Positions 15,462-53,298 of a stretch of 64,000 bases of DNA are shown here, in pieces. The notes beneath the pieces were generated by a model. It saw only the letters and a program-made list of their open reading frames with translations. It had not been told where the DNA came from and made no database searches. Numbering within the stretch: the first letter of the stretch is position 1; each line of letters begins with the position of its first letter. The DNA comes from Macrostomum hystrix (lineage: Eukaryota; Animalia; Platyhelminthes). The stretch covers positions 8,184,001 through 8,248,000 of the forward strand of contig CATNEN010000029.1 in assembly GCA_950097015.1 (NCBI GenBank), in the 5' to 3' direction. The position numbers were made by a program, and so were the translations under genes.

Positions 15462-17932
15462 CAATTATGATAATATTTAATACATAAATTATTTAAACAT
15501 TGGTAATAGATCGTTTCCGAATATCGCTTTTCTTAGAAAGCATATGGTAAAATTGATATTTTGTTATAAATTGGACTTGTTTAAATGAAGGAATATTTGC
15601 TATACCATATAAAAATTTGTTTAAATGTGTCCGCGATTTTTACAAAATAAATATAAATACAGCTGAGTTTAGCAAAAGAAAAGTGACTTGCGGTTCATAC
15701 CAAGTTTTTATACAATACTCAGAAGTGTTCTTTCATTCTTTATAAAACACAAGGAGATAAATACTGAGAGAATTCAAGAGAGAGAAGTAGAAAGTATTGC
15801 TGTACACTTGAGTTCATTGGAAAGGCTTTTGAGAAAGCTTATACTGAGAAATGCATACATATGATAAAGTAATCAGCTATAATAACTAAATATGATATTT
15901 AGACCAACTAAATACAATACTTAGACTAACTAAATATGATACTAGATAAATACACTACCGAGAAATTCTTTGATATATATAAAATACATTCTCAGAGACT
16001 ACCTAGACATTATATTAAAATACCTCTGTAAACAACTTTTGTAAGATATAAAAAATTAGAACTACCACAACTTAGGTGAAATTGTGGAATTGTGGTAGAA
16101 TAGGCCTAGAAATTAATCCTGCAAAAACTTTAGTGACATCATATCCTTAGAGTGATAGGGCCTAATTAAAGAGAGAAGCACTTGGACAACTTTGGTGGCA
16201 TCATTGGGATAAAAACTTTACTAAGAAATTAGACCTAAAACACATTGATGACTTCAAATGTTGTATTTATACAAGCTGTGATAATGATTATCCCAATCCT
16301 ATTCCTATATTAATTACTTAGGGCTTATAGGGCTTAGGGCTTAGGGCATAAGGGCTTATTTTTTTTTTTGCCAATCAGTGCCAAATGAAACCTAAACAAA
16401 GTAATTGGTAGAAGCATATACTGCAAGATACAATTGACTAGTTGGGATGAGTGAGCCAGTAATGGCCAAGAGGAGGCCGAGCGTTAGCAAGACTTGAATT
16501 GCATTTTAACACATGTCAACCAACTTTCTTGGGTGTCGCCTATACAACAATGCTGGTTTCAGACCGATTGGATGTTGTTTACTGAAGATGTGGGTAATTA
16601 AATTCCAAAAATGCGATTTTGGTCATTTTTAGTCTTTTTTCAAGGTACAAAACTGCATGGCCAGAATGTATTTGGTGTGCGATTTGAATGCAGCTTCAGT
16701 TTTTAGAAGTTCAACAGATGTGCGCACAAAATGTATATATTGAATTTTCTAAGCATCCACTTGCCCCTTAGGTGGATGCAAAAATCCTAAATTTTGACCC
16801 CCCTGGGGGCTAAAACATGCAAAATGGGATAAGTCACAACTTTTGATTGCTGCATCCGTTGGTGTTGCGCTTAGTGTTGATGAATTGCATTTAGGACCCT
16901 TTTTCATTTGATACTAGACTTGTGTACACACATTCAGTAGTTGGCCATCTGTACTAAAATATGTAACTGTACAGGTGTACATATGAGAGAAAAAGTTTGC
17001 CATTTCTGCCTTCTGCCCCTACAATGCACTTTGTTGCATTGAGCTGAAAATGGTGTCAATAGATGCATGTGGATGTTTGAAAGAGAATGACATGTCAACT
17101 TACGTGTTGTTTTCATAGAAATTGAATAAATCATGCATTTTTTCGAACCTATAAACTCAAATTTAGTAAAAATGGTGTTGCAAATTTTTTATGTACAGAG
17201 ACAAAATGTACCCAATACAATGCTGCATCAGATGAGCAGCTGCATTAGTGTTGGAAATTCGATTTTTCGAAATGGAAGGCACATTGCAGCAATTTTGACA
17301 CCCGGGGCCTATGCCAATTTCTCAAATGATTACTCATAAGATTTTAGTAATGCAATTTCTTGAAACAATTTTGGTGTTGTTGGCATAGCATTTAGAGCCC
17401 TCTTCAAAAGGACAGCATCCATGCCTGCCTGTGAACATTGATTGAGCGTCAGTTCACGGATGCAGTACTTTTAAGAGAAGCAGCATTTTCGAGTTTACTC
17501 TAATAAAATGTTGTTCTTTGCCCCAATGTCATTGAAAATGGTTTCAATAGATGCGTCTAGATGTTTCCAAGACAATGGCATGTCACTTGAAGCTGTGCAT
17601 CACATTTCAGATGTAGAGTTTTGATTTTCATTTATAAAACGTGATTTTTTCATCCACACAAATAATGCAGCCTTGAGTGAAAATTGTGCTAAAATGGTTA
17701 AGTAATCGCATGTAAGTTTCGCATATAAATTGTGTGCCCAGCATTTAAATGAATATGGTGCTTTAGTCTTGGAAAGTTTAATTATCTTATGAAGTATGAA
17801 TAGGAAGTAAGCAGTAATTAATGAAAGATCATCCTGTTTTTTGCATCACATAAATTGAAAACGAAATTTCATCAGTTGAAGTTTGAATTAGAAATAGAAT
17901 ACACAGGCTACAGCCCTCCATGCATTTGTCAG

Positions 17933-20770: not shown

Positions 20771-21202
20771 TGTAACTGAATGATTGCGATAGCCTGCAGC
20801 CCTCTTGTAATTTTTATTAAACGTTAATTATTTATATTCAGACACATAATACACCGTAACATGCGCAGCGCAGCTTCTTCTTCTTCTTGTGTAAATTATT
20901 ATATCACGCGAGCTTTTTTCGAATATCGAACGTCATGACTGAAAATATTTTATGATACATATTCTAGAAAAAAAATATTTATACTTTTTATTATTTATTA
21001 CAATCTTTTCAATCAACTTATTTTTTGATACGTAACCGTTGACTTAAGTACTACTCATATTTTTGATTTACGACGTACAGTGAACTTTTTCAGCGCATAA
21101 TCAAAATTTAAGAACATCTGCAACTAGCAAGATTTTAGAACTTGCTTTGAAGTTGCATTGAACTTGGTTTTTAGTTGAAGCCGAACATCATATTCATATA
21201 AA

Positions 21203-23571
21203 ATGACTTTTCTTTTGAAAAATAGTTCTGTTAAAGTACTTCAGCAAGAATATAAAAATCTAAATGACTCTCCTGTAGAGGGTTTTATTGTGCGCTTGAA
21301 GAATGATACCTATATGTACGAATGGGACGTCATCATTTTCGGTCCTCCAGGAACCCTGTATGAAGGGGGTTACTTAAAAGTAAGTAAACTATTTTACAAT
21401 TGATTAAAAACTCTTGTAACAACGAAATCGCGAATCTCTAATTAGAGATCAGAACTTAATAGAATCAGTCATCTCAAAGACAATAATATAATCTCTCTTG
21501 AAGTTGTGTAACGAAGTAACGAAGTTTAATTATGCCCATCCATTTATGAAAATTGTAATGTGTTTATAAAATCATTGGAATTTCGGTGACAATTTCAATA
21601 AATTTTCTACGCAGAACATTTTTTCGTTTTATTTGTCACAAGGCAAAGTCGATATCTGCAGCTTGATTCTCAATTGTGCAGGCTGGCCTGAAGTTTCCTA
21701 CCGACTATCCATATTCGCCGCCATCTATGAAATTTATTACTAAGATGTGGCATCCAAACATATATGAGGTGAGATTTGGTGTCTTATAAAATCTAATCTG
21801 GTTTAGAAAACTGGCATGCAAAGTCTGCGATATCTTGCTGTTCCTCAGGATGGCAAGGTGTGCATCTCGATTCTGCACCCGCCGGGCGAAGATCCAGTTA
21901 GCGGTGAGCTGCCCTCTGAGCGTTGGAATCCGACGCAGAATGTTCGCACTATACTACTCAGTGTGATTTCGTTGCTAAATGAGCCTAACACAAGCTCGCC
22001 GGCTAATGTTGACGCGTCTGTTATGTACCGCAAGTGGAAGGAGGGCAGTGACTCTGAATACACCGATATTGTGAGGTGAGAAACGTACACTGCATAGTTC
22101 ATCTCCGACCTGTTAAAGGAAGTTTCTTTAAGATGGAGAATTGGGGATATTTCAAGAAGGATGTTTTACTGAGTAACTAGCATATATTATTCAAGCTAAT
22201 CCATCTTATTGCATTTATTTTTGCATAATGTGTTACTTTTATTAGAGTCAATTATTTCGCTTAAACAATAAATTTTAGTCAGTTATAGTCTCTGACATCA
22301 CAGCAGCCAGTCTCTGACATCACAGCAACCAGTCTCTGACATCACAGCAACCAGTCTCTGACATCACAGCAACCAGTCTCTGATATCACAGCAAACAGTC
22401 TCTGACATCACAGCAGCCAGTGTCTAACATCACAGCAGCCAGTCTCTGACATCACAGCAGCCAGTCTCTAACATCACAGCAACCAGTCTTTGACATCACA
22501 GCAACCAGTGTCTAACATCACAGCAACCAGTCTCTGACATCACAGCAGCCAGTGTCTAACATCACAGCAGCCAGTCTCTGACATCACAGCAACCAGTCTC
22601 TAACATCACAGCAGCCAGTCTCTGACATCACAGCAACCAGTCTCTAACATCACAGCAGCCAGTCTCTGACATCACAGCAACCAGTCTCTAACATCACAGC
22701 AGCCAGTGTCTAACATCACAGCAGCCAGTCTCTGACATCACAGCAACCAGTCTCTAACATCACAGCAGCCAGTCTCTGACATCACAGCAACCAGTCTCTA
22801 ACATCACAGCAGCCAGTCTCTGACATCACAGCAACCAGTCTCTAACATCACAGCAGCCAGTCTCTGACATCACAGCAACCAGTCTCTAACATCACAGCAG
22901 CCAGTCTCTGACATCACAGCAACCAGTCTCTAACATCACAGCAGCCAGTCTCTGACATCACAGCAACCAGTCTCTAACATCACAGCAGCCAGTGTCTAAC
23001 ATCACAGCAGCCAGTCTCTGACATCACAGCAACCAGTCTCTAACATCACAGCAGCCAGTCTCTGACATCACAGCAACCAGTCTCTAACATCACAGCAGCC
23101 AGTCTCTGACATCACAGCAACCAGTCTCTAACATCACAGCAGCCAGTCTCTGACATCACAGCAGCCAGTCTCTAACATCACAGCAACCAGTCTCTGACAT
23201 CACAGCAGCCAGTCTCTGACATCACAGCAACCAGTCTCTAACATCACAGCAGCCAGTCTCTAAGATCACAGCAACCAGTCTTTTGCATCACAACCGGTCG
23301 CAGTATGAAACCTACAGTCTCCTGGGTCGATGCCCAGCAGTCTCTAATATGACTATAAAATTAACTTTCTCCACAAAACTCTAGAAAGCAGGTGGAAGCC
23401 ACCAAGCTGGACGCAGTGGCCGACGGTGTTACTGTGCCCACCCGTGTCGAGGATTACGTTGTAAAAGCTCGCGCCTCGCCTGTCGGATTCGACCAGGACG
23501 CTTTCGCTACCATGCAGGATATCAACTATGATGACGACGTCACCATGTACTACGAAGATGAGGACGATTGA
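21203..23571 (+). CDS. CDC34: Ubiquitin-conjugating enzyme E2, CDC34/UBE2R family; exons 21203-21379, 21682-21768, 21849-22075, 23385-23571
   Basis: [48 protein letters not shown] (catalytic Cys), the CDC34-type acidic loop [37 protein letters not shown], and an acidic C-tail (YYEDEDD*); phases consistent. Confidence 0.95.
22287..23280 (+). repeat. 22-bp minisatellite (CCAGTCTCT(G/A)ACATCACAGCA(A/G))n, ~45 copies, in CDC34 intron 3
   Basis: Directly visible; alternating variants give a 44-bp dimer in the middle of the array. Confidence 0.95.
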
Positions 23572-24720
23572 GTTTCAATATTACTGATGAGAACAAGAAT
23601 GTATAATTGCTTCGATTTTCGATTTTACTCTACGAGTTTGTCCGTTACAGAGGCTCATTAAAGTATAAATTAATACTGTGCACAAGATCTGAAATATTAT
23701 CTTCATGGCTGTCTTTCCTCGCCAATCAGATTTTTGTTTTATACTTTAAGTTTTATAATTTTTAACAAAACTGACGCCTTATCCTGTCTTTTCGTGTGTT
23801 AATTGGTGTTTATTTCTTTCAGCTGCTAAAACTATTCGCCATTCATCGGTTTTGCTTTCTTCATTTTCTAATTTTAACTTGATCTTTACCTAGCAGTCCA
23901 TCTGCAGGGGTCTGCAGGGGAACCTTCACCACGTCATTTTTTTCAGTGAACTGTCACCTACCTTTTATAAAAATTCATTGGACCGTCGATTCTACGTTTT
24001 ACATCTTTAGCTTACTCGTTATTCTCAGTACCATCGGGCAACCTTCATCTTCGTCATACTTAAAGATCTATCGTTTCGTGAATTGCACATGGAGAAGTTT
24101 TGGCACGCGAGTCTTTAGGGCTATATAGCTGCGAGCTGAAACAGGAAAGGGTGTCTTTAAACTAAGTGAAGTGATGCTAGCTGGTGGTAAGACGCGCGAG
24201 GCCATATAGGTAAATGAAAGATTGCATGCCTTGCATCGCATCACTCTGTTCAATCTGGAGTCTGTTGCCTTGTGCTTTCTGCTCAATTGGTTGAGAGAAT
24301 TGCGAATTGAGAAGCCTCTTGTAGGGCAGGAGCCTGTGAAGGGTTGGCGCGGTGCACACTTTTTGGCCTCAGCAAGAAGAGTTGGGTGCGTCCGAATACT
24401 GTGGCACATTGGAGACTCGTAAATTGCTACCGATTTCTTACACCAAGATAGAAGAGACAACTAGGGGGCTTCAATGTGAGTGTGGGTGTCTTCAATAGCG
24501 TTTGTTCGGTACTTCTACTGGGCACTGGCCGAGCGCATTATAGATTCCCATGCACTAGTCTTCATTTCTTTTCACTTAAAACGACAAGACAAGACGCTAG
24601 GGTCACGCCCAGTGCTGTTTATAAGAAACGTATGGTACTTTTCTGTAGTCCTAAGAAGAAAACTGAAAGTTAAAGCAAGCTGTGTTTATTTCGCAAACCG
24701 GGATGCGCTGGCCTACCACA

Positions 24721-27700
24721 ATGGGGCCTATCGGTAAGAAACTTCTTCGAAGTTATATATAAGTACAAATATTTCAGCGACTGACCTGTCATAAAGCATA
24801 TGGCATGTGATCTAAAAACCGGTTGAAATGGGCAGCGATGCTGAAAGATCTGATTTGAAGGCGAGAATCATCAGAAACATTTCAGTTGAATACGAGAATG
24901 GCAGAAAGATCTGATTTGAAGGCGAGAATCATCAGAAACATTTCAGTTGAATACGAGAATGGCAGAAAGATCTGATTTGAAGGCGAGAATCATCAGAAGC
25001 ATATCAGTTGAATACGAGAATGGCAGAAAGATCTGATTTGAAGGCGAGAATCATCAGAAGCATATCAGTTGAATACGAGAATGGCAGAAAGATCTGATTT
25101 GAAGGCGAGAATCATCAGAAACATATCAGTTAAATACGAGAATGGCAGAAAGATCTGATTTGAAGGCGAGAATCATCAGAAGCATATCAGTTGAATACGA
25201 GAATGGCAGAAAGATCTGATTTGAAGGCGAGAATCATCAGAAGCATATCAGTTGAATACGAGAATGGCAGAAAGATCTGATTTGAAGGCGAGAACTGTAT
25301 TAGGTCTGAATCGAAGGCGAAAGTTGCGGGTTGAACGCAAATGGTGGACAAAAGTGGGACTTGATAAAAAAAACGCATATACTCAATTTACCTGCCCAAA
25401 GTTTGAGTTTATTTCTTCTTTGCAGCAGTGGCCGCCACCTACTTCATCTTGGCTGTGTTGCAACTCGCCAACTGTCAAATACCGGAGCCATTCTGCTCAT
25501 GTGTGCCGCTAACCACCAAGTATTTCTTCACGACTCCACCAACGACAACAACTGGCACCACTACAACACAGACAAGCACTACACCGACAACTACAAGTAC
25601 TCCAAGTACAACAACTACTGTTCAAACGACGACCACCAAGAGTGAGTGTATTGCTGACAACTTATTCGAACTGTTCTGTTCTGAATGCTAAACATTGAAG
25701 TTTTAATGAAAGGATTTGACTTACATAAAGCTTATACTACATTAAGTATATTATTTGAAAAGCAGCCTAAAAGCCTAAATTTCCAGTCTGTAATATCGTG
25801 GATGGCATGCTAGACAAGACCTACATAACAGACTCAGCCATTTCCGGCGCCAGAATCGGCCCAGCGGGGGAATTCCGCATTATCAAAGGCCAGCAAATGG
25901 TTGTTAACTATATGGCTGATAACAACTGTCTCTCGGGCACGGGTGTGTACACTATTCGGCTCTGCATCGGCGGCAATATTCGATCGGCAATTGTATCATA
26001 CAGATCCGGAGACCAAGGCAGATTCGTTCCTTTGGAGGGCTCAGCTGGCAAGATGGTGGACACGTCTGGGTCCAAGTTATGCTACGATATTGGCTTTGCT
26101 GTGATGGCAGTCGCATTTCAGCCAGAGACTCTCAAGCCCAGCTCAAGTACCGATGCCGAGTACCAGGCCTACGTCAGTATTGAAGGCTGTTTTACTCCCG
26201 TGAGGAATACCTGCACATCGACCACAAGCTCTACAACAACTACTTCTACAACGCCAACTACATCCACAACGTCTAGCACAACTAGCTCGTCTACAGCTTC
26301 AACTAGCACAACTACAACACCGACTACGCCTACTACAAGCACCAGTACAACTACTGCTACTACAACAACTACAACAGGGCCATCAACTACTACATGTACG
26401 TTTTGGCTAGCTTTCGCCAAATATTCATTCATCTTGAGTATTTGGTTCATTTGGGGTTTGTTACACACCTAATCCTTGAGCTACATTATTCAGCCTTTAT
26501 TCTCCGCTTGCCTTCTGGTAGAAAGCGCTCTTAGTCTGCAGTTTGACTTCACCCTTCATTTCAGCTTGTCTCGTCGTGAACGGGATGTCCGACTTCAACT
26601 ATATCCCCCTAACAGCGGTGAAATCAGCCCTGTGGGGTCCATTCACTGGCTGGAGTGTTGAAAAGAGCGCTGTTATGCAGATCGACCTGGTTTTGGGAAC
26701 CTGCCGCTCTCCTATTCTGGTTCAAAAGGTAAAGAAAATTTGAATTAAACGATTATGATCAATACATTAACAAATAATCATAACCAAAACATGTACTTTT
26801 GTAGCTATGTTTGAGCGGAAACGTGAAGCAAGCTCACATTCTGTATCGGTCAGTTTCTACTGCGCTGTTCTCTGAGCTGGCCTCCTCGCTAGATGTGGTA
26901 TCTGACACATTGGATCTCTGCTATAGCATCAGCACTATCGTGGCCCAGTTCGCCATTTTCCCGGTGCAGCTGAAGCCAAGCTTTTCAGGAGACGCACAGT
27001 ACAACTTTTTCGTCTCAATCGATGCCTGTTTCACGCCTCTACCACCGGTGTGCTTAACAACCAGCACGACCTCTACTACGACTACTTCGCCAACGACCTC
27101 TACATCAAGTACACGAACGACGACAGCAACAACTGCTGCAACATCTACTACGCCAACAACTACCACGCCAATCACTTCAACGACACCAACTACTAGTACA
27201 ACAACAACTTCGACTTCAACAACACTAACCACTGCAGCGACTACGACACATTTACCAACATCAAGCACTTCTACAACGACGCCAACTACAACTATTAGCA
27301 CAGCGACTTCCGTGCCAATAACTACAACTACGACAAGATCTACGCCTACTACTAGTACATCAACTTCTACTACGACAACGCCCACTACTACAGCAACTAC
27401 AACGACTGTTGTACCTACTGGTAAGAAAATAAAATTTAAAAGTAGAAAGACCACTCAGCCCATATTGTAAGTATTGTCAACACGCTCGGTTTTTTCTGCA
27501 TCTCTTAAAATATTCAAACAATCGCCATGAAAATCCACATCAATGTTAAGCTTTTCCTCATTTTCTGATTAAACATCTTTCAGCATCCCGACTTGCAATG
27601 GTTCTCGTCGGGTTGTCTAGTGGCAAGAACCACCAATATAGGCTTACAAAATTTCATTATGCTACCAGTTCCACTATTAATATTTCTTATACTGTAGTGA

Positions 27701-30700
27701 TTACATAGTTCATCGTAAAGGGCGGAAAAGTTTGATCCATGTGCGGGGGAGTTTCGCGAAAATTGGTCGTTCGGTTTGGGATCTAAAATGCCCCAAAATG
27801 CCCCTGTAGTCTTCCCCGGGGGAAAAATAGCAATTTTCTTTCTACTGTTAATGCATTTTTCTTACAGTGGATTAAAAGTAGGCATGGCAGACAGGTGCAA
27901 AATAATAAACTAGGTTGTAATTCATTTTTTCCGAGAACCATTACTCGCATGTTTTATAATTAAATATATCTCGGTTTTTTAACTAGCAGTCAAAACAGAT
28001 GGACTAATTATAAGTGGCTTAAAATATATTTTTAATTTCAGTCTGCTCTTCGTTTAACGGCTTGTCAAGCAACTCCTACCTGCCAGGATTCGCCATAGCT
28101 GGAGCTGTTGTGGACCCGGTAACCGGGTATAACATGCCGAGAGTCGCTACCAACTCATTGGATATCGATCTGACAGTATTTGGCTGTCGCAGTCACACTG
28201 TATACATTGAAGAGGTAACTGGTGAGGCAAGATGCCACAAAATGTCACAAAAAATATTTTATACAGTTTCTGCTACTTTTGATACTATTCTTTTTTATCG
28301 GAACTCCATAACTTCAACCCCGACTGCAGGTGTGTCTATTGGGCAATGTGAAGCAAGCCAGCCTGCAACTGAAGCGCAGCATGAGTGGTATTTACGAATT
28401 GTCCAGTTTGTCCAGCACAATTGTTGGCGATCTACCCTCAAACAGCCTGTGCTACATAATTCAACAAAACCTAACAGCCATTAGGATTACGCCAAGCTTT
28501 ATAAAGTCATACGATAGCGCATCGGCCAATTATAAGTTCTTTTTGACAGTTGTAGGCTGCTTTGATACCCTATCCACCTGCTTACCACCGACCACAACTT
28601 CGAAATCTACAACAACATCAACTACGACTACAAAGCCTACTACTAGTACTACTACGACAGCGCTAACTACCACAAGCACTACTACCAGCACTACGAGTAG
28701 CACGACAGCGTCAACAACTACCACAACGACGCCGACTACTACAACGACATCAACTAAAACAACCCCAACAACGACTACAACAAGCGCGCCGATAACTACC
28801 ACAGGTAAACGTGAGCTGCAAGAAGATCACCTGACATTTAATAGTAGCTCGTATAAATATCGTGATAATTTTTACTGTTTAAGTTATGCAATAGTTGGAA
28901 ACCAATGCACCAATTTGTAGAAAAAAACGACAGCCAGTTCATAAATCACGAACTCATACTTAAAGTATTTTTTCTGTCCATTGCAGCCTGTCCCGTGGTT
29001 GACGGCATTCAGAATCCGCTAATCATTCCTAACTTGGATATTGCGTTTGGCGGCAGGCGGGACCCACTCACTGGCGCCTTCAGCATGCAGCCCGGCCAGC
29101 TAATGGTGATCGACATTTCGGCCAGAGGCTGCCGCTCAGCTTCGTATATCTCCCAGGTGAGTTCAATATATTTATAATATATCAGTTAATAATATACGAA
29201 TGATGCCGTGATAACTGACGACTTGTTTTAAATCTGACCCGCTTTTTAATATTTTTTTTTCTACTAGGTGTGCTTAGCTGGCAATGTTCGCACGGCGTAC
29301 GTCCTGGTCAAGGAGGACCCGTTTATCTTGGCTCGCCTCATTGACGAGTCTTTTACAAAGGTGGCCAGCAGTAGTGAAATTTTGTGCATCAATATCAGCC
29401 GATTCGGACTTGAAGTTCAGATCTCGCCCCAGTCATTTAAAGGCGCAAGTGATAGCACCTACCTGATGTACATTATGTTATACGGCTGCTTTAAAGAACT
29501 GCCATCCTCGTGTTTAACTACAACTTCGACAACAACAACTTCCACGACAACTCCCACCACTATGACGACAACCACGCCTACAACTTCAACTTCAACTTCT
29601 ACAACAGCGACCACTACACCAACGACTACTACCACGACTACTCCGACGACTACCCTAACAACTTCGACTACTGCAACAACTACAACGCCTAGTACTACGA
29701 CCACGACCTCTACAACTACAACACCAACTACTTCTACGTCTACTATTACGACACCAACTACTACAGCTACTACTACTGTTACTACTACGACACCTTCAAC
29801 TACGTGTACGATGATGATGATACACCTCACACATTCTCTAATACTCAATGAAAAATATTAAAATTTCTATATAAAATTTTATAACTAAATTTGCAGATTG
29901 CCCGATAGTGGATGGCCTGTCAAGTCAGGTATTCATTCCAAGCATGGATATCACCGGAGTGGCAATAAATGGAGCCGGTGCCTTCACCCTGTCACCCGGA
30001 GGAGCTATTCAGATTGACATCTCAGCACGAAGGTGCCGTTCAGCTGTTCGCATATTTAATGTCTGCTTGGGGGGCAATGTGGCAACAATGTCCTTGTTAA
30101 TTCAGGCCAGTGTAATCGAAAGGTACGTTGTGACTCCAATCACCGCAGTTTCAAAGTCTCCTGGGGTTTTTTGCTTCGATATCAATCGTGACATCACTGG
30201 GCTTCAAGTATCTCCTCTGACGTCGATAACCTCTGGAAGTGGCGAGTTTGTGTTCTATATGAACATGTACGGCTGCTTTACACCGCTTAATCCGGCTTGT
30301 CTGACTACTAGTAGCACTACGAGCACTACCACAACACCGTCAACTACTACGACTTCAACCACTACTGCTACCACTACTCCAACGCCCACAACAACAAGTA
30401 CAACAACTACAACCTCAACAACTACAACGCCGACAACTTCAACGACTACAACAACGCCAACTACTTCAACCACAACGACAGCACCATCAACAACCACATC
30501 AACTACCACAACAACCCCAACAACTACAACAACAACCCCCACGACAACATCGATGGCTACAACAACAACACCGACAACAATTACAACTTCGAGTACTATG
30601 ACAACAACGACATCGACGACGACAACTCCCGTGCCTACCATCTGTCCCAAAGTGAATGGGATCTCTGACGTGCGATACATTCCGGATTGGGCTATCGTTG

Positions 30701-33700
30701 GTGGAACAGAAAGGCTGGGCCAATATAATGTTCCATTTCCTCTCGGAAATTTGACGATTGATTTAACAGCTGGTGGCTGCCGCACCGATCCAACATACCT
30801 CATGCAGCTCTGCTTAGTAGGAAATGTTGCTAGGACATTGGTTTATGCTCGCGGATCTTACTCAAGCAATATATACTCCATTGTATTTGAATCAGAGCGC
30901 ACATCCGTTTCCTCGTCCGCCACACCACTTTGTATTCCACTTGGTGGTGGCATTACCGGTCTAGTAATTGTTCCAGTGGCGCTTCAGAACTCCACTTTAA
31001 CAGATACATCTTATCGCTTTTATCTGTCAATTGACGGTTGCTTTGTTTATCTCCCAAGCAATTGTTTAACCCAGCCGACCACGAGGACTACAGAGGCAAC
31101 AAGCACTACAACAACCTCGACAACTACATCAACAACAAGAACTACTTCAACGACTACAACACCTACGACCACATCGACGGCAAGTACTTCAACGTCAACA
31201 ACTGGAAGCTGCATAGTTAATGGTCTAACAAGCGGCAATTACATCCCGGCGTTCGCCATCGCAGCGCCAGGTTATAGCCCTCTGTCTGGTTTCAGTGTTC
31301 CGAGGACATCTACGAACGGTGTTTTCGTTGACCTGTCTGTTTATGGCTGTCGCTCTTCAATTTTTGTTTACAAGGTTCGTGCATCTCCGCGAAACGTATT
31401 ACTCGCACACCTCGTATAATTCAACCCACCATCGCGATAAAATACTGCTACTCATTACTTTATTTTGTTGTCTTCCATAAATATATATGTTTAATTTTTT
31501 AGATTTGCTTACTCGGTGGAAATGTACGCCGAGCGACACTGATGATCCGACAGAGTGCACTAAACTCATGGGAACCATACGCGTCACTTAGCAGCGACAC
31601 TCTTGCTCCGATATGCTACAGTCCGCCTTTGCCGATTACCGAGCTGCACGTGTTGCCACAGGAGTTTAAATCGGGTACTACTGATACCACAGCCTACATG
31701 TTCTTCATGACCATTGAAGCCTGTTTTAATGTCCTGCCAGCCGTATGCCTAACACCGCCAACGACTACCACAACAACAACAACAACACCAACAACTACCA
31801 CTGTAACGACATCAACGCCGATGAATACACAGAGTACTTCCACCACTAGTACAACCACTTCAACAACAAGGACATCAACTACTACGCCAACGACTACAGC
31901 ATCCTGTTTAGTCAATGGACTATCTGACGAACGGTATTTGCCGCGTTCCGCACTATCTGGGGCAAACAACACGGAGTCAGGCTACACGATGTCCACGGAT
32001 GGCTTCAGTGCGCTCACTATTGATTTGTCTGTGACGGGTTGCCGAGCTCCTATCGCTGTGGACAGGGTGAGCTTTCAGGGTGATGGATGTTTAAGGTCCT
32101 GAACTTCACCCTCTTATGGATATAGTCTAGCTGGTATTTAATAGTCTTTCTTTCAAAAGAAAAAAGCTGGCGAAAAGTACGTTATCAATCTAAGAAAGCC
32201 GCAACGTTAACAGAGCTATCACACTTGCCGATCGATAGTAAAAGAATGAGTTAAAGAGAGCCTAATATGCTATAATAGCTTATTGGAGTTTCAATTAACG
32301 ATATTTCTTAAATGCGTCTCCTCTTAATCAGAAGAAGTATGGTTCCTGACAACCTACGTTTTATATTTCAAAATTATGGCTCGCACAGGTCTGTCTGATA
32401 GGCAACATTCAACAGTGCAGCGTGCAGTACCAGACAGTCTATGGAGGCCCTTACCTCGCCGACGCCAGTTCGCTGCTTTTGAGGGCAATCGGAATTGGCG
32501 ACGCGCTCTGTTTCACACCGCCACTAGGTGCCTTTATCACTGGCATTAGGTTGACACCGCTGCAGCTGAAGTCTGCCTACAGCAGTGATCCAGCGTACAG
32601 AACCTTCCTGTTGGTCTATGCCTGTTTTGGCTACTTGGACAGCGCGTGCTTCACCCCGCCGACTACCACCACCAGTACTACACCGACAACTACAACACCC
32701 ACTTCAACAAGCACTACGACTTCAACTACCACTACGACTACCACACCGACAACTACAACTCGAATGACGCGTGAGTTTGCCAGTGACGAAAAGTCACAGA
32801 TGCAAGTGATTGGCGGGGTTCTAGCAGATAATGGAGGAGAACGCAATGCTTGACCAAAAAAGCTTAATGTTTGGCTGAAAAAGGAGTATTTCAACTAAAA
32901 AATATTTATACTCGTAACTGTCTTATCCACTGAATGTGAAACTGTTACTCGTATTGCTTTTGTCGCGCTATGTGGAACAGTGGACATGCAAAACGGAACG
33001 GCCCATTGAATTCTATGGCCGAGCATTTGAATTCACATGAGAAAGTAAGCCATAGACAACTCAAATTGTCATGCTATGTGGAACGATGAGCCAGTATTAC
33101 TATGAACAATGACTATATTACTATTTACAGGCAATGCAAAGCTTCAAATCCTTTAGGTTCCATCTAAAAAGCATAATAATTTGTCGCAATCCCACTAACA
33201 GTGTGTCCTTCAGTAAATGGATTGTCCAGCACGGCGTTGATACCCGGATCTGCCATCACTGGCGCCGTTTTCCAGAGCGGCACCGGCTGGAAAATGCCAG
33301 CATCCGCGCCGGGAAGTCTCAGTGTTGACATCACCGCCGATGGCTGTCGACTGCCGTTAATCGTCGACCGGGCAAGTGCTAACCGTAGAAAAACCACGCT
33401 ATTTTTAGCCACAAATACCCACTGCCTACTTCAAAATAGCTCCCAAACCAAATGACCGATTTTTGTGAAAGTCCAACATCGAAATCAAAATTATCCGCAT
33501 CGTCGCGATTCTCAGCGATTCTTGTCGAACAACCTGGTGATAAGAACAAATAAAATAGCTCAGTATAAACATCTTTGGCGAATCCACATCGGTTCAAAAG
33601 TGTAAAGATTAACAATATAATAAGTACAAAAATATACAACAATAGTAGCCAATTTGATTACTTGTGTGAGCAGAATTTTGTGAGCAGAAAATTTTTTACC

Positions 33701-36700
33701 TATATTTGTGGTTTTTGCCACCAGATACCCTGACGACGTTGAATATCTCGACGATGCCGCGATGTTATGTGATTCTGGAAATTGTCTCATCGGATAGAGT
33801 GGAAACTTTTAGCCCATGTTCTGGATTTTCATTACGATTGGTTGCATATTTTAGGAGATAGAGAAAAAAATTGGGTATTTGAAATACGTACCCCCTACAG
33901 TCTTTCTACTTTCAAATAAATTACAGATTTTGTAATATGCATAACTGTTTCAAACTAGCAATACAATAACTAGTCCAACACTGGTAGCGAATTTTCGGCT
34001 CAAATTTGAGTTTTAATTATCCACTGGCCGTTAAAAAACGTAGATAGTTTTTTACAAAGACCGAAAGTGGGTGACTAAATTATTTTATACTCATGCAGTG
34101 ACAGTATGAACACCGCAAAACAGTACTGCTAGTGGTACAGCCGCAGCTATTGCACCGCGCTTGTGTAAAGTGTGTCATTCAACGGATGTTTTTACTTCGA
34201 ATACGGCAGACGACTGTTTTAGCGGCACTTTCACGTTTTTTGAAATGGGTACCATGCCCGCGTAGAAACAATGGTCAAATTTGAAATCGGGGTTGGTGAA
34301 TTGAATTCTAGCATCCTAGTGAATCGTTTGCCGAACTCGTATATCTGCTGTCATAATTTTTTCCTATAAGCTCCTAATTAGTGCGCAGCATCGGAAAATG
34401 GTTAGCGAACATTAAATAAGTTCTAGTACTTAATTTTGCTTCATTTTAGGTGTGCCTACTTGGCAATGTGAGAAGGGCCAATCTCTTCTACCGTAGGACT
34501 GCAACTTCAGCGACGGACATCTTCGCCGACTCCTTGAGCCTGGTGGCCGAAAATTTTCAGCTGTGCTACAACCTGGGCTTCTCAGTGGCATTGCTGCAGA
34601 TTAGTCCTGTTGAGCTGCTTAGTGCTTCTACTAGCTACGAATTCTACCTTAGTGTTTACGCCTGCTTCACTCCCATTAACTGTCCAACAACGTTGACAAC
34701 TACCACCACTACCACACCAACCACCAGCACCACAACAACATCAACACCCACAACTTCTTCCGCCACAAGCACCACATCGACAACGACCTCTACAACGAGT
34801 ACAAGTACAGCTACAACACCAACAACGACAACAACAACCACTCCCACTACTACTTCAACCACAACATCGAGAACGACTAGGACAACTCCGACTACGACCA
34901 TAACAACTCCCTGTGAGCCCTTATCATTTATTTAACTAATTTACGCCGCCCAGATGATGTTTATTTTTACAGATGTTTAAAGACGTATTGGATTTTCTCA
35001 TATCAAACAATCCATGGCAGGCAAATCGATTGGCTGGTTGTCGCAGACGGGGCAGCCAATGTACCACCTAAGTAACAAATCAAAGAGGGAATTGTTTTTT
35101 TTCATTCCAGCATGCTTCGTTGATGCTATGAGCCGCTCTGATTTGCTTCCATTGTGGACTATCACTGGCGTCGGCGCCACCTACCAGGAGTTCTCTGGCT
35201 TCTCGATTCCCACCAATGGAACGCCAGGGCTTCAGATTGATCTCACGGTCCTGGGTTGCCGGTCAGCAGCAATGATTGGCCAGGTAAATTAAACATTTTT
35301 CATTATTACATTCATTTTCGAGTTTTGGTGAGGATTGTATTGAACATTTTTTTCATTGCTTAGTTTGCAATCGAAATCTACGAGTAATTAGATTTAAGTG
35401 TAAAAGTAATGACTATAGCTCGTAATTGTTTTATCTCGTGCCTTTCATCGAAACCTTTGCTTATCATTTTTAGTACACTCTATCTAACTCGATTTATTAT
35501 CACTTTCACTTGCAGCTCTGCATCGCCGGGAATGTGCAACGCGCTGAAATTTTCATCAAAGAGTCAGTGAGTGGCAGCTACCTCCTGGACTTCAGAACTC
35601 CCGGAGTGACCTCTGCCAGCGGCGCTCCCCTTTGCTATCAACTCGATAGGATCGCCGCTGCGATTCTGATCGCTCCGAAAGAGCTTAAACCGGGAGTCGC
35701 TGGTTCATTCTATCAATTCTTCATCTCACTACAGGCCTGCATTACACCGCTTAGTGGTAGTTGCCTCATTGCGCCTACCAGTACAACAACTACCACTACA
35801 ACTACCCCGACAACTACAAGTACAACAACAACTACAACGCCAACAATGACTTCAGCTACAACACCTACAACTAGTGCTACTACGAGAACCACTACAAAAA
35901 CACTCACAACAACAATTGAAACAACAACCACCTGCCTCATCGATGGCTTCAGTCAGAATGCTTTCATTCCATCGTTCGCTGTGACTGGCGCGATCTACGA
36001 AACTTTCAGCGGCTTCATAATGAAGTTTGGTGCTTCAGGTGCGCTCACAGTCGACCTCACAGTGTACTCATGCAGATCGCCGATTTTCGTTGAACGGGTG
36101 AGCCTGCTAAAGGAGAAACTATTAAAAAGCTTGTTAATGCCGTGCACAATTTTGTAAAAAAAGCACACGAGATATGCTTGTAATGTGAGTTAGCTTTTGT
36201 CAAAACGATTTCTATACCAGATTCTATCTTAAGTACGAGCCGTAGCTAGGTTTTTGGTGGGAAAAATTATGAGCGACAAAGCGACCCACATAGATAGACT
36301 GGTGATACTTATTCTACTTATGTTTAGGTGTGCCTCTCTGGCAACGTGCGAGTTGCGAATATGTTCTACGCGGACAGTGTCACTTCTGAATTGCGACTCG
36401 ACATGAACTCGCAAATGTTCGAATCTGACAGCAGCAGCTCATTGTGTTACAGTCCGCGCAGATCAGTAGCGAGGTTTGCGGTGGTTCCACTATTGCTGAA
36501 GACCGCCTCTAGTGGAGACACCAACTATGCCTTTTTTGTTCGGGTTGACGCCTGCTTCACGCCACTTCCGAGCGCATGTCTGGTGCCACCCACGTCAACA
36601 ACTACTAGTACAACAACAACCCCCACTACCATCACTACAAGTACAACTTCGACGACCACAACGCCAACTACGACAACTTCGACGACCACTACTCCAACAA

Positions 36701-39700
36701 CTTCTACAACTACATCGACCAGTACCACACTAACCACTAGTATTCCTAGTACTAGCCCGAGTACAACTTCAACTAGCACGACTCCAACGACTAGTACCAC
36801 AACAACAACGCCAACTACGACTACTACAACTTCTACTACAACTACTACTCCAAGTACGACTACTACGACCAGCACAACTAGGCCAACAACAACAACAGCC
36901 ACTTCGACTAGTACTAGTACTACTACCACTCCTGTCCCAACAAGTACGGAAAATTTATGCCAATGTACTAAATTTTCGCTTTTTTAATCTTGTAATATTG
37001 TTAATAGCACACCGAAATTTGTTAAAGTAAATCTTGTAAATCTTGCGTACTTGTTGTCTCAAGCCAGAGCTGAATCAGACAATCAGCTGAGCACGAAAAT
37101 CTGTACACCCAAACCACTATCTACACAGGATGTCCATCCGTGAATCTTCTATCATCGACCGATTATCTTCCGACGTGGGCGATCTCAGGTGGAACCTATT
37201 CGCCCACCATCGGTTACAGCGTTACCAGAGGCCAGTTTCTCACGATCGACATCACGGCAAATAGTTGCCGCACGCCGAATTACGTTTTCTCTGTGAGTCT
37301 GGCAATCTATGAAATCTGTTATTTTCTCGATTAACGCATAGTTTTTGACACTGCGCAATAACATGCCCGCGTGAAAAACCATCACAGGTTTGCGTGATAG
37401 GAGGCAACGTCAAGCAGTCGGATCTATTCTACCGAACTTCATCAGCCGGTGGATTTTCTGTGCTCTCCGATTCCCAAGCATCCTCACTCGACTCCCCCGG
37501 CGTGCTATGCTACACTATCAACTTCAATGTTCACACATTTCTGATTGCTCCGAAAGAGCCTAAGTCAAGCGACCCTTCTGCCGCGGTGTATCAGTTCTAC
37601 TTATCCATTCAGGGCTGCTTCAATCCTCTCCCTATGTGCGTACCTCCTACTTCGTCGACTACTACAACTAGTACAACTACAACGCAGACTACAACAGGGA
37701 CAACCCCGACTACTACAACTGTAACTTCAACTTGTAAGCGCTTGTGATTGAAGCGAGAGTTTTTTACTACATATTGGTGCGAATTAAAGGATCAAGAGTG
37801 TAACTCATTCACATTATTCGAGATATTACTGTATTATGGTTGGAAAAAAACTAACAAAGATTTAAATGGATTTAAATTTCAGTCTGCCCAATGGTGAATG
37901 CGCTGTCGCGACTCGACTATCTGCCGATGCAGTTCATTTCGGGTCAAGATTCATTCAACGATGCCACTGGATTCAGAATCGGTGTGACTGGCGGGGGTCG
38001 ACTGTTTGTTGACTTGACCGCCGGCAACTGCAGGAGTGCTGTTTATGTTGACCGAGTGTGTACTTTTAGTTCCATTTTTAAAACGAATTCTCATGAACTA
38101 CTACTATCCTGATGCTGATACTTTTACTACTACTGACTCAATCGCTTTCAGATCTGCTTATCAGGCAACATCAAACAGGCCACAATACAGTACAGACAGA
38201 GTGGCCTGTTCCAGACACTCACGGCCTCCTTGTCTCTCGTAAGCGATATTCTGTCAGCGGATCTGTGCTACACTTTCGGCTTCCAGGTGGCTGAATTCAC
38301 TGTGCAACCCAGGTCGTTAAAATCTTTTTCTGCGTCGAGTTTGAGCTATCAGACATACCTGGAGATTATCGGCTGTTTTGTGCCAATCAATCCGGCCTGC
38401 ATCACTACTACTACGCCGACCACAACAACTAGCACGACCACCAGTACGACGCCGTCAACTACTACAACCACATCGACTACTACTACAACGCCTACAACCT
38501 CTACAACTAGTACAAGTACTGTCCCAACGACAACTTGTAAGTGTGCTTAGATCTCCTTCAGGCTAGATAAAGATGTCTATCTGAGATATACTTAAGGATT
38601 TTCGTTATAACAAAAACGCATAATTTTTAATGAAGGAAATGTTTCTAAACCAATTTATTGTCGAATTATCTGAACACAAAGCTGCATATTTCAGCCTGCC
38701 CGGAGGTCAACCTGATGACAAGCAGCGTCTACCTGCCCAGATTCGCCATCACGGGAGGCACCTACAGTGAAATTGTCGGCTACATTTTTCCCAGCGGAAC
38801 AGCTGACTCCCTGGTGATTGACATCTCCGTGCTCGGCTGCCGCAGCGCCGCCTACGTCACGAGGGTGAGCTTGTCAAGTTAGGCTTTGAATGTCACAGCA
38901 AGCTTGGCTGACGTTTTGCCTTATGCATGTATACTTTTTACGAGCTTAGTTTCGACCAAAAACGTTTATGTTTTCAGATTTGCGTGATGGGCAACATACG
39001 GCAGGCAACAATTACCTACAAAGTGTCCGCTGCCAGCGCAACTAGTACTTTGGCTTCGTCCGAGACTGCCATAATTTCAACCGCCAGCAGATACTGTTAT
39101 TCTGTGGGATTCAATGTTTACAGTGTGTCACTGATGCCCCGATCGATGCAGCTGCCCGCAATAGCCAACTATCAGTTTTACCTTGAACTTTATGCCTGCA
39201 CAAGCCCATTGCCACCGGCATGTCAGGTACTGAGCACAAGCACGACTTCAACATCTACTACTCCAAGTACTGCAACTTCGACAATGCGAAAGTCGACAAC
39301 TACTTCAACGACTCCAACTTCAACAACAAGTTCAATGACTTCTTCGACAACGCCGACAACAACTTCCAGTACCACTACCACAATCTCTACAACACCGACG
39401 TCTACCACGACATCAACGACCACTACAAAACCCACTACTATAGCGAGCACCCAGTCAACAACAACAACAAGTAGCACTACAGCGCCAACGTCCACTTCCA
39501 GTACCACTACAACTACATCCACAATAACAAGTACACCAGCGACGACAAGCACAACAACAACTACTACTACACCCACAACTACAACTACAACACCTACAAC
39601 AACTAGTACTACACCGACAACATCAACTACTACGAGTACTACTACGAGCACAACTCCTACAACTACGTCAACTACAACAACGCCTACAACAATAACTACG

Positions 39701-42369
39701 CCGATAACAACACCCTCCACAGCAACAACTGCTACTACTAAAACGATTAGCACAACCACTACGCCAACAACTTCAACAACTACACCCACAACAACTCGAA
39801 CAACAACTATTACAACTACAGTGCCTAGTACAACTACGGTATGCGTCTGTCCAACTAACTACCAGCCAGTGTTTAAAAATGTGAAAGCTGTTGAAATGAA
39901 TCTTCGCTTTGCCAACATGCAATGGTTTAGCGACTATCGAGTGGCCGAAAGCTGGCGCTACCAGCAGCTGGCAAACTATCTAGTAGAGACGGTGATGGCG
40001 TCTGCTAGGCAGACCAGTCTGTACCAGGAGCTGCAGGATGTTGTCAATATCAGGTTCACGGAGGGCAGTGTGAGAGCCACTTTTAACTTGGTGGTTCGGG
40101 ACAGCTCTAAAAACACGGCGGCCAGTTTACTGAGCTTGCTTGAAAAGGGACTCAGCACCATGCCGTTAGGTGGCATCATAATTGACGGCATTAGCTCTCC
40201 GGGTGAGACTTTGTTGTTGTTTCTGTTCTTTTTATCTTTCGAAGAAAATAGAGGAATGTTTCAGAGAGCTGAGTGCCTGAACACTTGATGATGGGAGAAA
40301 GAGGAATGATTGCTGAAAACTATATATTATTTATCAGTTCAGACCTGGCTGCTCTTTTGATGGACGCGAAATTGGGCCACGGCTTGCATTTAAGATAGAC
40401 AAGAGCTCCAATAGAAGCTAAATATACGAGCTACATACGTATTTATTTAGCGAATTTTGTCAGGTGTGCCGTCAAAGTGTTTCGATTCGCCACGAGTCCC
40501 ATTTTTAGTACAGACGGTTCAGTGTAGTGTCAACGAGAAGGTCACGACTTTACTAGCCAAAGCTGCTACTGATCATAGCTGATCTTGAATGCTCTTGTCA
40601 ACTCTGGGTTTTAACCGCCACGAAGTTCACAAGTTTTCGCAAGACTTACACAAGAGCTCGAGCCTAATTGAATGCAACTGATATTACAGCCTGTAACTTA
40701 AACGATTAAAACATAAATGTATAGATTCACGGTGATTGCACATAACCCAGTTGGGTTATATATGTTCAGTAGACTGTACCGCCAACAGGAGGGCCACCAA
40801 ACCCCAGCTCATGCTGAGACACATTCTCCCCCAGCTAGGTGACAAGTCTGATTCGCAAGGAAGAAACAGTTTCCCTTTGTTAACAGTAAAAATACCACGA
40901 TGGGTATTTCAAATACAAACATTTTTCGTTTTTCGATGTCTCCCGAAATGCTCAACCAATGGCCATGAAAATCCAGAACGCGGGCAAAAATTTTCCGCTC
41001 TGTCTGATGAAACTGCTTCCAGAATCACAAAACATCGGCATCTTCGGGATATTCGACAATTCTCGTCGGGGTTGTCTCATGGCAAAAACTACCAATATAG
41101 TCATAATTATATGTTAATTTTTATATTATTGATCGAATATGGATTCGCCGTGTAGGTTTATATCGAGCATGTCAGTTGTCCTTGTCATCAGAGTCTCCGC
41201 TGAATATCTCGAATATGAATTCGGTTTATAGGAGCTATCATGAAGTAGGCAGTGGGTATATGAAATAGCCCCGTGGTTTTTCCCCGGGGGAAAAATAGCG
41301 TGGTTATAAGGCACCTCTACCCTGGGTCAGGTGATGAGATGCTTGGATTAGGCGAAAATCGTAGCAAATAAAAAAGTATTTTTTTATGGACTCCACATTA
41401 TGGCTTGGAAATCCGCCGACCCGCAGAGCTGACCACTGCAGGTCCGGCCTCCACTGCCGCCGTCGTCGTCACGTCGACCACTCTCGGGCTGCACGTGTCT
41501 ACAACAACAGCCGCTCAACAAGGCGGCATCGGAGCCAGCAGTGTCACTCTGATTGTGCTGGTCTGCTGCCTAGGCGGTGGCTTCCTACTGCTTCTGGCCA
41601 TCTTTATCATTGTGAGTGCCTCCCGATGGTTGCACGCTTGTATATGGCTGCAATCGGAACTCCCAGTCGGTCTTGTAGAAACCCCACTTTCTAAGAAACC
41701 GAACTCGCTCATGCGATTCGTCTAAAACAATGCTACGCCTTTTTTATATCATAAAAAGGTGAATTTTGCAAATATTTCCCCTGCACAAACATAACTGCAA
41801 ATCGAGAGCAGCACAAAAAGCTTCTTTCAGACGTGTTTTTTCATAACGAAAATGGGTTCCATGACTGCGCGGGTTATCTAAAATTATGTATGAAAAGAAA
41901 AAGAAAGATTCATTGACCCAGTTGGGCCAGATTTATCGCCAATGACTCAGCCGCAGCTATGGCGTGACACTTTCAAAAGCTGTCTACACCTGTTCAGTCC
42001 ATGGACTGGAGGGCCGCCATAGCAACCCAGCTGATGCGGGAATATATTTCACACCTGGGTGAGCTGAGCGATTGGGAATTAACTGTCTTGATCAATTACA
42101 CAAATTGTTTCTCTTGGCTAAGATTCGAACTCTCGACCTTTAGTACTAAAAGCCACCTCTAGGGAGGGACAGGTTGATAAACACCGAGGTCGGTGTTTCG
42201 CGGTCAGGCCAGAAATCTAATAACTAATTGAATCCAATCTGAAATTCCCACCCAGGTCTATGCTGTTCACATGCGGCGATTGCAAAATGGTCTCAGAGTG
42301 AAGATGAAGCAAGAGGCCAGGATTCTGGACGAGGCGCTGGACGGAGGAGCGTCAGTCGGACACCTATAG
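24721..42369 (+). CDS. Large type-I transmembrane mucin-like protein (~3,390 aa): signal peptide, 14 x [six-Cys ~150-aa domain + Thr/Ser/Pro linker], SEA domain, TM helix, short tail. Exons 24721-24733, 25426-25641, 25787-26395, 26565-26728, 26805-27420, 28042-28214, 28330-28804, 28987-29156, 29268-29805, 29897-31374, 31503-32066, 32389-32770, 33202-33371, 34450-34912, 35111-35283, 35516-36097, 36328-36943, 37129-37292, 37388-37733, 37883-38055, 38152-38536, 38695-38864, 38978-40202, 41427-41611, 42256-42369
   Basis: Signal peptide MGPIAVAATYFILAVLQLANC (an in-frame upstream ATG at 24703 is also possible); all 24 joins are phase-compatible and the exon lengths sum to 10164 nt (divisible by 3); SEA-like segment with FTEGSVRA; TM SSVTLIVLVCCLGGGFLLLLAIFIIVYAV. 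First and last exons are the least certain. Confidence 0.82.
24844..25294 (+). repeat. 59-bp tandem repeat, ~7.5 copies, in the predicted first intron of the mucin gene
   Basis: AAAGATCTGATTTGAAGGCGAGAATCATCAGAA(A/G)CAT(T/A)TCAGTTGAATACGAGAATGGCAG recurs every 59 bp. Confidence 0.95.
27520..27835 (+). mobile_element. Dispersed repeat family B (other copies ~33700-33840 on - and ~40960-41300 on +), all in mucin introns
   Basis: Shared blocks CCATGAAAATCC, TTCTCGTCGGG(G)TTGTCT..TGGCAA.AAC(C/T)ACCAATATAG and CCCCGGGGGAAAAATAGC; no coding capacity or ends defined. Confidence 0.5.
39870..40202 (+). other. SEA domain coding segment within the mucin gene
   Basis: EMNLRFANMQWFSDY...YQQLANYLVETVM...DVVNIRFTEGSVRATFNLVV: SEA-type pattern with F-x-x-G/S-V cleavage motif just before the TM exon. 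Confidence 0.75.
42110..42190 (-). mobile_element. tRNA-like fragment (probable SINE head)
   Basis: Minus strand reads GTGGCTTTTAGTACTAAAGGTCGAGAGTTCGAATCTTAG: anticodon-arm-like segment plus B-box GTTCGAATC. Confidence 0.35.

Positions 42370-45556: not shown

Positions 45557-53298
<7,742 letters not shown>

What the first reader, a model, noticed from the sequence alone, without database searches (positions are those of the whole stretch)
24721..42369. Giant cell-surface mucin with 14 divergent copies of an unrecognised six-cysteine domain
Seen: 14 modules of ~140-150 aa start near 25787, 26565, 28042, 28987, 29897, 30643, 31210, 31905, 33202, 35111, 35933, 37129, 37883 and 38695. Consensus: C-x2-V-[ND]-G-L-S-x3-Y-[IL]-P-x2-A-I-x-G...[ILV]-D-[LI]-[TS]-x2-G-C-R-S...V-C-L-x-G-N-V...L-C-Y...I-x-P-x2-L-K...Y-x-F-x-L-x-I-x-[GA]-C-F-x-P-L-x3-C. 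Six Cys are kept in each while the intervening residues differ strongly, and every module is followed by a Thr-rich linker. Known: known SEA transmembrane mucins mostly have one long PTS region rather than beads on a string. Inference: the N- and C-terminal Cys and the 'I-x-P...L-x-I-x-GC' ending recall the discoidin/F5-8C beta-sandwich, so this may be a diversified lectin-like array on a glycosylated stalk (glycocalyx, adhesion or microbe recognition). This is the best candidate for an undescribed system in the window.
Basis: partly seen in the sequence, partly recalled or inferred. Interest (0 to 1): 0.85.

Follow-up and report, generated by a model that had tools for sequence, protein, structure and literature searches.

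The report
Flatworm membrane mucin with discoidin beads
A Macrostomum flatworm gene encodes a giant membrane-anchored mucin whose threonine-rich stalk carries 14 very divergent copies of a known fold (discoidin, F5/8 type C); the fold is not new, but this bead-on-stalk membrane protein and its invariant two-cysteine tip appear in no paper I could search.

Summary
Observation confirmed. The 25 exons give an intact 3,387-aa frame: signal peptide, 14 six-cysteine modules (134-142 aa, median 32% identical) on Thr/Ser linkers, SEA domain with a G-S cleavage-type motif, one transmembrane helix, short tail.

The module is not a new fold. Pfam misses it, but a confident model (pLDDT 95.7) matches discoidin/F5-8C domains (Z 11.7). 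Two-cysteine relatives sit as beads in another animal's gel-forming mucin, a known lophotrochozoan trait.

M. lignano has an orthologue (modules 68-82% identical, same order) and a paralogue (37-52%). Modules group by position, not by gene, so this is an old, stable array, not a fast-diversifying receptor. Sugar binding is unsupported.

The scan noted discoidin-bead mucins elsewhere in this genome (unchecked notes), not this gene.

Verdict: new variant of a known kind, interest 0.4.

The parts
24703..42369 (+). Whole gene, 25 exons, 3,387 aa from ATG 24721 (3,393 aa from the in-frame ATG 24703); type I membrane mucin
   Evidence: M. lignano orthologue models span leader to tail
24703..25475 (+). 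Signal peptide, split over exons 1 and 2 (inferred from hydropathy and the orthologue; no dedicated predictor run)
25488..25538 (+). 17-aa N-terminal tip peptide with a CxC (C28, C30); identical in the M. lignano orthologue and paralogue; 7 of 17 codons differ from the paralogue, all silently
25789..26214 (+). Module 1 (no intron)
26567..27053 (+). Module 2 (phase-0 intron between Cys2 and Cys3)
28044..28581 (+). Module 3 (split)
28989..29513 (+). Module 4 (split)
29899..30300 (+). Module 5 (no intron)
30643..31065 (+). Module 6 (no intron); modelled, discoidin/F5-8C fold
31210..31748 (+). Module 7 (split)
31905..32649 (+). Module 8 (split; seventh Cys absent from the orthologue)
33204..34683 (+). 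Module 9 (split; GC donor)
35113..35764 (+). Module 10 (split)
35933..36579 (+). Module 11 (split)
37131..37639 (+). Module 12 (split)
37885..38400 (+). Module 13 (split)
38697..39223 (+). Module 14 (split)
39224..39838 (+). Longest Thr/Ser/Pro stalk segment (205 aa); all linkers together 1,190 aa, 80% Thr+Ser
39839..39874 (+). Second CxC (C3169, C3171) just before SEA; kept in the orthologue and in a distant paralogue (P0005)
39884..40198 (+). SEA domain; G-S-V cleavage-type motif within 40055-40081
   Evidence: Pfam PF01390 32.5 bits, cut-off 26.4
41549..42267 (+). Single transmembrane helix across exons 24 and 25; near-identical to the orthologue
42268..42369 (+). 33-aa cytoplasmic tail and stop

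Best explanation
A single Macrostomum gene encodes a type I membrane mucin for a cell-surface coat. Shown: leader, 14 modules on Thr/Ser linkers, SEA, one transmembrane helix and tail in one intact frame; the module models as a discoidin (F5/8 type C) beta-sandwich; its nearest non-flatworm relatives are two-cysteine beads of a gel-forming mucin; module order is fixed across species and across a gene duplication. Inferred: the linkers are densely O-glycosylated and form a rod of roughly 300 nm (about 0.25 nm per residue, own knowledge). SEA self-cleaves at G-S and acts as a force-release joint, as in vertebrate membrane mucins. Cys1-Cys5 is the usual discoidin disulfide tying both ends of a module together, so each bead hangs sideways off the rod; Cys2-Cys6 and Cys3-Cys4 are flatworm additions that stiffen it. 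The beads most likely act as low-affinity, multivalent contact points that bind neighbouring mucins or secreted mucus and so organise and hold the coat. The gene probably arose when [bead + Thr-linker] exon units from a gel-forming mucin were joined to a SEA-transmembrane anchor and duplicated in tandem long ago.
For: Gene model and splice sites. Module alignment. SEA. AlphaFold pLDDT 95.7. Foldseek top hits muskelin discoidin and factor VIII C2, E about 1e-4 to 4e-4. VIA Z 11.7, rmsd 3.2 over 121 residues to neuropilin-1 b1, tied with factor V C2 and discoidin I at 11.6. Atlas TM 0.67-0.68 to F5/8C clusters. A window-only profile found P0011 among 1.84 billion proteins (E 6.6e-5). Its contig holds about 15 such beads plus canonical F5/8C, TIL, VWC and cystine knot. 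Reciprocal profiles score 10-54 bits against shuffled maxima of 3-5. The relative models at Z 16.0 to neuropilin-1 b1 and keeps only Cys1 and Cys5. PMC4948705: F5_F8 domains are characteristic of lophotrochozoan mucin-like proteins. Orthologue and paralogue keep module order and the internal intron positions checked. Phase-1 introns precede 10 of 14 modules.
Against: No expression, localisation, glycosylation, cleavage or binding data. The fold rests on predicted models, and module 6 was modelled with an alignment that included the distant relatives. Disulfide pairs are inferred; I could not read model coordinates. The ligand is unknown. The VWD end of the distant mucin lies off the contig and was not seen. 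The origin scenario has no rooted tree behind it.
Confidence: 0.6

Rival explanations
1. Multivalent lectin or microbe sensor: each bead binds a different foreign glycan (CBM32- or discoidin-like), and the stalk presents them to capture or hold off microbes.
For: The fold is shared with CBM32, discoidin I and F-type lectin. Loops on the presumed ligand face differ between modules (18-24% identity) but are kept between species (64-80%).
Against: Loops on the opposite face behave much the same (57-81% between species), so there is no face-specific signal. There are only 7 Trp and 4 His in 1,940 module residues, none conserved. Best structural matches are protein- and lipid-binding animal domains, with CBM32 lower. 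No hypervariability between species.
Confidence: 0.2
2. Purely structural beads: the modules have lost ligand binding and serve as disulfide-locked, protease-resistant spacers; barrier and lubrication come from the O-glycans alone.
For: Conserved positions are mostly Cys, Gly, Pro and hydrophobic core. The long binding loops of canonical F5/8C look shortened: 141 vs 154-160 residues and a two-residue Gly-Asn turn between strands. Net charge is near zero in all modules.
Against: Position-specific identity of each module has been kept through a gene duplication whose silent sites are saturated, more order than interchangeable spacers need. No homogenisation among copies.
Confidence: 0.15
3. Several genes or a partly decayed locus rather than one giant protein.
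For: The NCBI annotation splits the M. lignano paralogue into two genes, and that contig shows frameshifts in modules 6, 7 and 9. No transcript evidence was obtained.
Against: One uninterrupted frame with matching phases over 25 exons; one leader and one transmembrane helix; UniRef models of the orthologue run from leader to tail; silent-only changes in the tip peptide.
Confidence: 0.05

Closest known systems
SEA-type membrane mucins (MUC1, MUC3, MUC12, MUC17)
   Same: Signal peptide, Thr/Ser/Pro-rich stalk, SEA domain with G-S motif near the membrane, one transmembrane helix, short tail (family description in PMC9578598).
   Different: The stalk is cut into short linkers by 14 folded discoidin-type beads. 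No EGF domains, only a lone CxC before SEA. It has a conserved CxC tip. [quoted passage not shown] Common descent was not tested.
Lophotrochozoan gel-forming mucins / hemolectin-hemocytin type with F5_F8 domains (PMC4948705)
   Same: F5/8C-fold beads within Thr-rich regions; the nearest non-flatworm relatives of the module lie in such a gene, with TIL, VWC and cystine knot.
   Different: No VWD, C8, TIL, VWC, CysD or cystine knot here; the protein is membrane-anchored. Beads have six Cys instead of two and fall below Pfam detection.
F5/8 type C / discoidin domain (PF00754): neuropilin b1, factor V and VIII C2, DDR, CASPR2, discoidin I
   Same: Same beta-sandwich over the whole module (Z 10.8-11.7, about 121 of 141 residues), with terminal Cys pair.
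   Different: 8-15% identity in structural alignments, no Pfam hit, shorter binding loops, four extra Cys.
Macrostomum lignano UniRef models A0A1I8HA14, A0A1I8G2V1, A0A1I8HYN9 (orthologue); A0A1I8FZS0, PAA49141.1 (paralogue); A0A1I8IX78 (short paralogue)
   Same: Same modules; orthologue and paralogue share order and tip peptide; SEA-transmembrane end in the orthologue and in A0A1I8IX78.
   Different: Partial automatic predictions with generic or wrong names (membrane-associated, ZP, PKD, REJ, CUB); no paper found.

Membership tests
SEA-type membrane mucin | N-terminal signal sequence and single-pass type I topology | tested here: met
   Hydrophobic leader and one strong 19-residue segment, mean hydropathy 2.94; kept in the orthologue
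SEA-type membrane mucin | Extended Thr/Ser/Pro-rich region | tested here: met
   1,190 linker residues, 80% Thr+Ser, but in short pieces between folded modules
SEA-type membrane mucin | Membrane-proximal SEA domain | tested here: met
   PF01390 32.5 bits, cut-off 26.4
SEA-type membrane mucin | Autoproteolysis at the G-S motif | tested here: inconclusive
   G-S-V present and kept in the orthologue and P0005; cleavage itself cannot be shown
SEA-type membrane mucin | Dense O-glycosylation and glycocalyx localisation | not testable with these tools
   Needs glycoproteomics and imaging
SEA-type membrane mucin | Common descent with vertebrate MUC1/MUC3-type genes | not tested
   No SEA phylogeny was built; convergent assembly is likely
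F5/8 type C (discoidin) domain | Pfam PF00754 match above the gathering score | tested here: not met
   No hit for window modules 1, 5, 6 or 11 second halves; one half-bead of the distant relative gives 23.2 bits vs 28.2
F5/8 type C (discoidin) domain | Discoidin beta-sandwich fold over the whole domain | tested here: met
   Predicted model pLDDT 95.7; Z 11.7, rmsd 3.2, 121 aligned
F5/8 type C (discoidin) domain | Cys at the domain start and in the last strand (terminal disulfide) | tested here: met
   Cys1 and Cys5 invariant, and the only two kept in distant relatives; the bond itself is inferred
F5/8 type C (discoidin) domain | Sequence continuity with recognised members | tested here: inconclusive
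   Strong link to two-Cys beads, but only weak links from those to canonical F5/8C
CBM32 / discoidin-type lectin | Conserved sugar-binding His/Arg/aromatic residues on the loop face | tested here: inconclusive
   No conserved Trp or His; the one conserved Arg lies in a loop inferred to be on the opposite face; no residue-level superposition was available
Gel-forming mucin / hemolectin / SCO-spondin | VWD-C8-TIL units and C-terminal cystine knot, secreted | tested here: not met
   Only four mature-ectodomain Cys lie outside the modules; the protein ends in SEA, transmembrane helix and tail

The most novel reading that the evidence does not exclude
The invariant N-terminal CxC peptide and the CxC beside the SEA domain are a disulfide clasp. 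They either close the roughly 3,100-residue ectodomain into a giant loop or link the tip of one molecule to the tip or base of another. That would make a membrane mucin that polymerises covalently into a tethered net, something normally reserved for secreted gel-forming mucins, and it would have been assembled in flatworms independently of vertebrates.
Probability: 0.2. Interest if true: 0.7.

Novelty: new variant of a known kind. Interest (0 to 1): 0.4.

Why it matters
It shows a SEA-anchored membrane mucin design in a flatworm, although the literature places that design in vertebrates (PMC9578598), and suggests it was built with beads taken from secreted gel-forming mucins. It defines a discoidin subfamily that Pfam misses, so such beads are probably under-annotated in invertebrate mucins. 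It gives a concrete, RNAi-testable candidate for the surface coat of a model flatworm. The invariant tip peptide is a small, sharp target for asking whether a membrane mucin can cross-link covalently.

Tried and rejected
New fold: rejected by structure. Pfam, PDB-sequence and phage searches of modules were blank. ESM Atlas feature searches gave nothing usable. The search for homologous proteins was blank or self-only; it sees only proteins of similar length, so this says nothing about longer kin. JGI metagenome scans were blank. P0010 (bacterial VCBS repeat protein) is a spurious hit: local domain scores under 6 bits. UniRef names ZP, PKD, REJ and CUB for the M. lignano models are not supported by Pfam for the models scanned. 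Concerted evolution or hypervariability was rejected by the tree and per-segment identities. dN/dS against the paralogue failed because silent sites are saturated, and no orthologue DNA was available. The spliced model was built only inside scripts; all database searches were made exon by exon by reference and the joined-protein search was left out. Two papers (PMC2042186, PMC5326570) were not held.

Full report
Observation. The region holds one gene on the + strand. I fixed 25 exon boundaries by hand and checked them in a script. All acceptors are AG; all donors are GT except one GC after 33371. The frame runs 3,387 codons to a stop at 42369. Six cysteines, a Gly-Asn pair and one Pro are invariant, while pairwise identity is only 22-43%. 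Linkers total 1,190 aa and are 80% Thr+Ser. A profile of the modules finds nothing else in the window. After the last linker come a SEA domain above Pfam's cut-off with a G-S-V motif, one transmembrane helix and a 33-aa tail. An in-frame ATG at 24703 may be the true start. Ten modules are preceded by a phase-1 intron and eleven are split by a phase-0 intron between Cys2 and Cys3, which fits tandem duplication of a module-plus-linker unit.

Source and close relatives. A profile made only from window exons, scored against 1.84 billion proteins, returned 11 hits. Eight are Macrostomum lignano predictions. Three are partial models of an orthologue, the longer ones running from leader to tail; modules are 68-82% identical in the same order, SEA 74%, and the transmembrane segment differs at one residue. 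A paralogue on an M. lignano contig has modules 1-9 in order with one extra copy of module 4, at 37-52% identity and with internal introns at matching places. A shorter paralogue has six-Cys modules without Thr linkers in its predicted model, then a SEA-like region and a hydrophobic segment. In a tree of 36 modules, copies group by position rather than by gene, mostly with strong support. The subtypes are thus older than the duplication and have not been homogenised.

What the module is. Pfam and PDB sequence searches are blank. AlphaFold2 on module 6 with a 35-row alignment gave pLDDT 95.7 and a mainly-beta fold. Foldseek's best hits are the muskelin discoidin domain and factor VIII C2. The exhaustive aligner ranks neuropilin-1 b1 (Z 11.7, rmsd 3.2, 121 residues), factor V C2, discoidin I, CASPR2 and DDR1 at the top, with CBM32 modules at 10 or below. 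The Atlas gives TM 0.67-0.68 to F5/8C clusters.

The bridge. One further hit, P0011 (E 6.6e-5), lies on a 107-kb contig of an unnamed AT-rich animal in an ENA assembly. Walking about 50 kb of it showed roughly 15 related beads between Thr-rich stretches. It also holds a canonical F5/8C (35.4 bits, above cut-off), TIL, VWC and a terminal cystine knot. That is the C-terminal part of a gel-forming mucin or hemolectin-type gene; its VWD end was not on the DNA read. Reciprocal profile tests link all 14 window modules to these beads (15.8-46.2 bits, shuffled maximum 3.0; reverse direction 10.5-53.5, shuffled maximum 5.1). The bead models at pLDDT 92.9 and matches neuropilin-1 b1 at Z 16.0. It keeps only Cys1 and Cys5. 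Lang et al. 2016 (PMC4948705) state that F5_F8 domains are characteristic of lophotrochozoan mucin-like proteins. So discoidin beads in a mucin are known. What I found in no paper is their transfer to a SEA-transmembrane anchor and the six-cysteine form.

How it most likely works. Steps here are inference from anatomy and family knowledge. The linkers become O-glycosylated and stiff, giving a rod of about 300 nm. The Cys1-Cys5 bond joins both ends of each bead at one pole, so beads hang off the rod with the usual ligand face pointing away. The extra pairs, probably Cys3-Cys4 on neighbouring strands and Cys2-Cys6 at the base, harden it. SEA should self-cleave and release under force, as described for vertebrate membrane mucins (PMC9578598). 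Since the relatives serve in secreted mucus, the simplest role is multivalent, low-affinity binding to neighbouring mucins or mucus that builds and holds a surface coat (0.6). A lectin or microbe-sensing role is possible (0.2). Against it, no Trp or His is conserved, both faces of the module diverge alike, and nothing is hypervariable between species. Inert spacers (0.15) and several genes (0.05) remain.

Right after the leader lies a 17-residue peptide with a CxC (25488-25538). It is identical in the window, the orthologue and the paralogue, whose modules share only 37-52%. Seven of its 17 codons differ from the paralogue, all silently. A second CxC precedes SEA and is kept even in the short paralogue. 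These are the only four cysteines of the mature ectodomain outside the modules. A CxC pairs poorly with itself (own knowledge), so they probably bond to each other or across molecules. It is the most novel reading left open (0.2).

Comparison and membership. It works like a SEA-type membrane mucin and meets the sequence criteria I could test. Descent from the vertebrate genes was not tested, and PMC9578598 says that class emerged in vertebrates, so convergence is likely. The modules are structural members of the discoidin superfamily but fail the Pfam family threshold. It is not a gel-forming mucin.

The spliced protein was assembled only in local scripts; database searches were made exon by exon by reference, and the joined-protein search was left out. 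A frameshift in a paralogue module was read through with X. No contig looked human. Earlier scan notes mention discoidin beads on Thr-rich strings and a mucin-SEA-transmembrane stalk elsewhere in this genome; they are unchecked leads, and none covers this gene.

Verdict. A real, conserved gene; known fold; known bead-in-mucin theme; undescribed membrane-anchored arrangement with an unexplained invariant tip. New variant of a known kind, interest 0.4.

Noticed in passing
window 25488-25538 and 39839-39874: Invariant 17-aa CxC tip peptide and a second CxC before SEA; the only mature-ectodomain cysteines outside the modules. Unexplained.
   Followed up: partly
L001, L006, L007, L008 (ENA ERZ25069853, contig ctg28616l, record 3904-53122): Unannotated gel-forming-mucin-type gene of an unnamed animal with about 15 two-Cys discoidin beads; one bead recurs three times nearly unchanged, and beads continue after the TIL/VWC block up to the cystine knot.
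   Followed up: partly
L004 2058-11268 (M. lignano NIVC01003964.1): Paralogue with a near-identical extra copy of module 4 placed between modules 1 and 2, and frameshifts in modules 6, 7 and 9 (assembly error or decay); annotated as two genes.
   Followed up: partly
P0005, P0007, P0008: M. lignano predictions with about four six-Cys modules lacking Thr linkers, then CxC and a SEA-like region; P0005 continues into a hydrophobic segment and a longer tail. Possibly a receptor-like relative.
   Followed up: partly
L005 379-624 (ENA ERZ27264358): 668-bp metagenome contig with a module-4-like first half after a Thr-rich stretch; probably another macrostomid.
   Followed up: partly
window 24843-25294: 61-bp tandem repeat, 7.4 copies, 98% matches, in intron 1 of the gene.
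   Followed up: no
window 33371-33372: The only non-GT donor of the gene is GC, at the phase-0 position shared with other modules.
   Followed up: yes
window 87-1950 (+): Ig-domain exons that look like a titin/twitchin-type muscle protein (read by eye).
   Followed up: no
window 7600-9640 (-): RING-CH (MARCH-type) E3 ligase-like exons (by eye).
   Followed up: no
window 12470-15470 (-): ALKBH8-like gene: RRM, AlkB and methyltransferase exons (by eye).
   Followed up: no
window 21179-23570 (+): CDC34/UBE2R-like ubiquitin-conjugating enzyme ending about 1.1 kb upstream of the mucin (by eye).
   Followed up: no
window 46089-50944 (-): Alpha-carbonic-anhydrase-like exons with repeat-filled introns (by eye).
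   Followed up: no
Not studied.
   Followed up: no
window 54914-57162: 36-bp tandem array, 63 copies, open in several frames on both strands; looks like a satellite rather than a gene.
   Followed up: no
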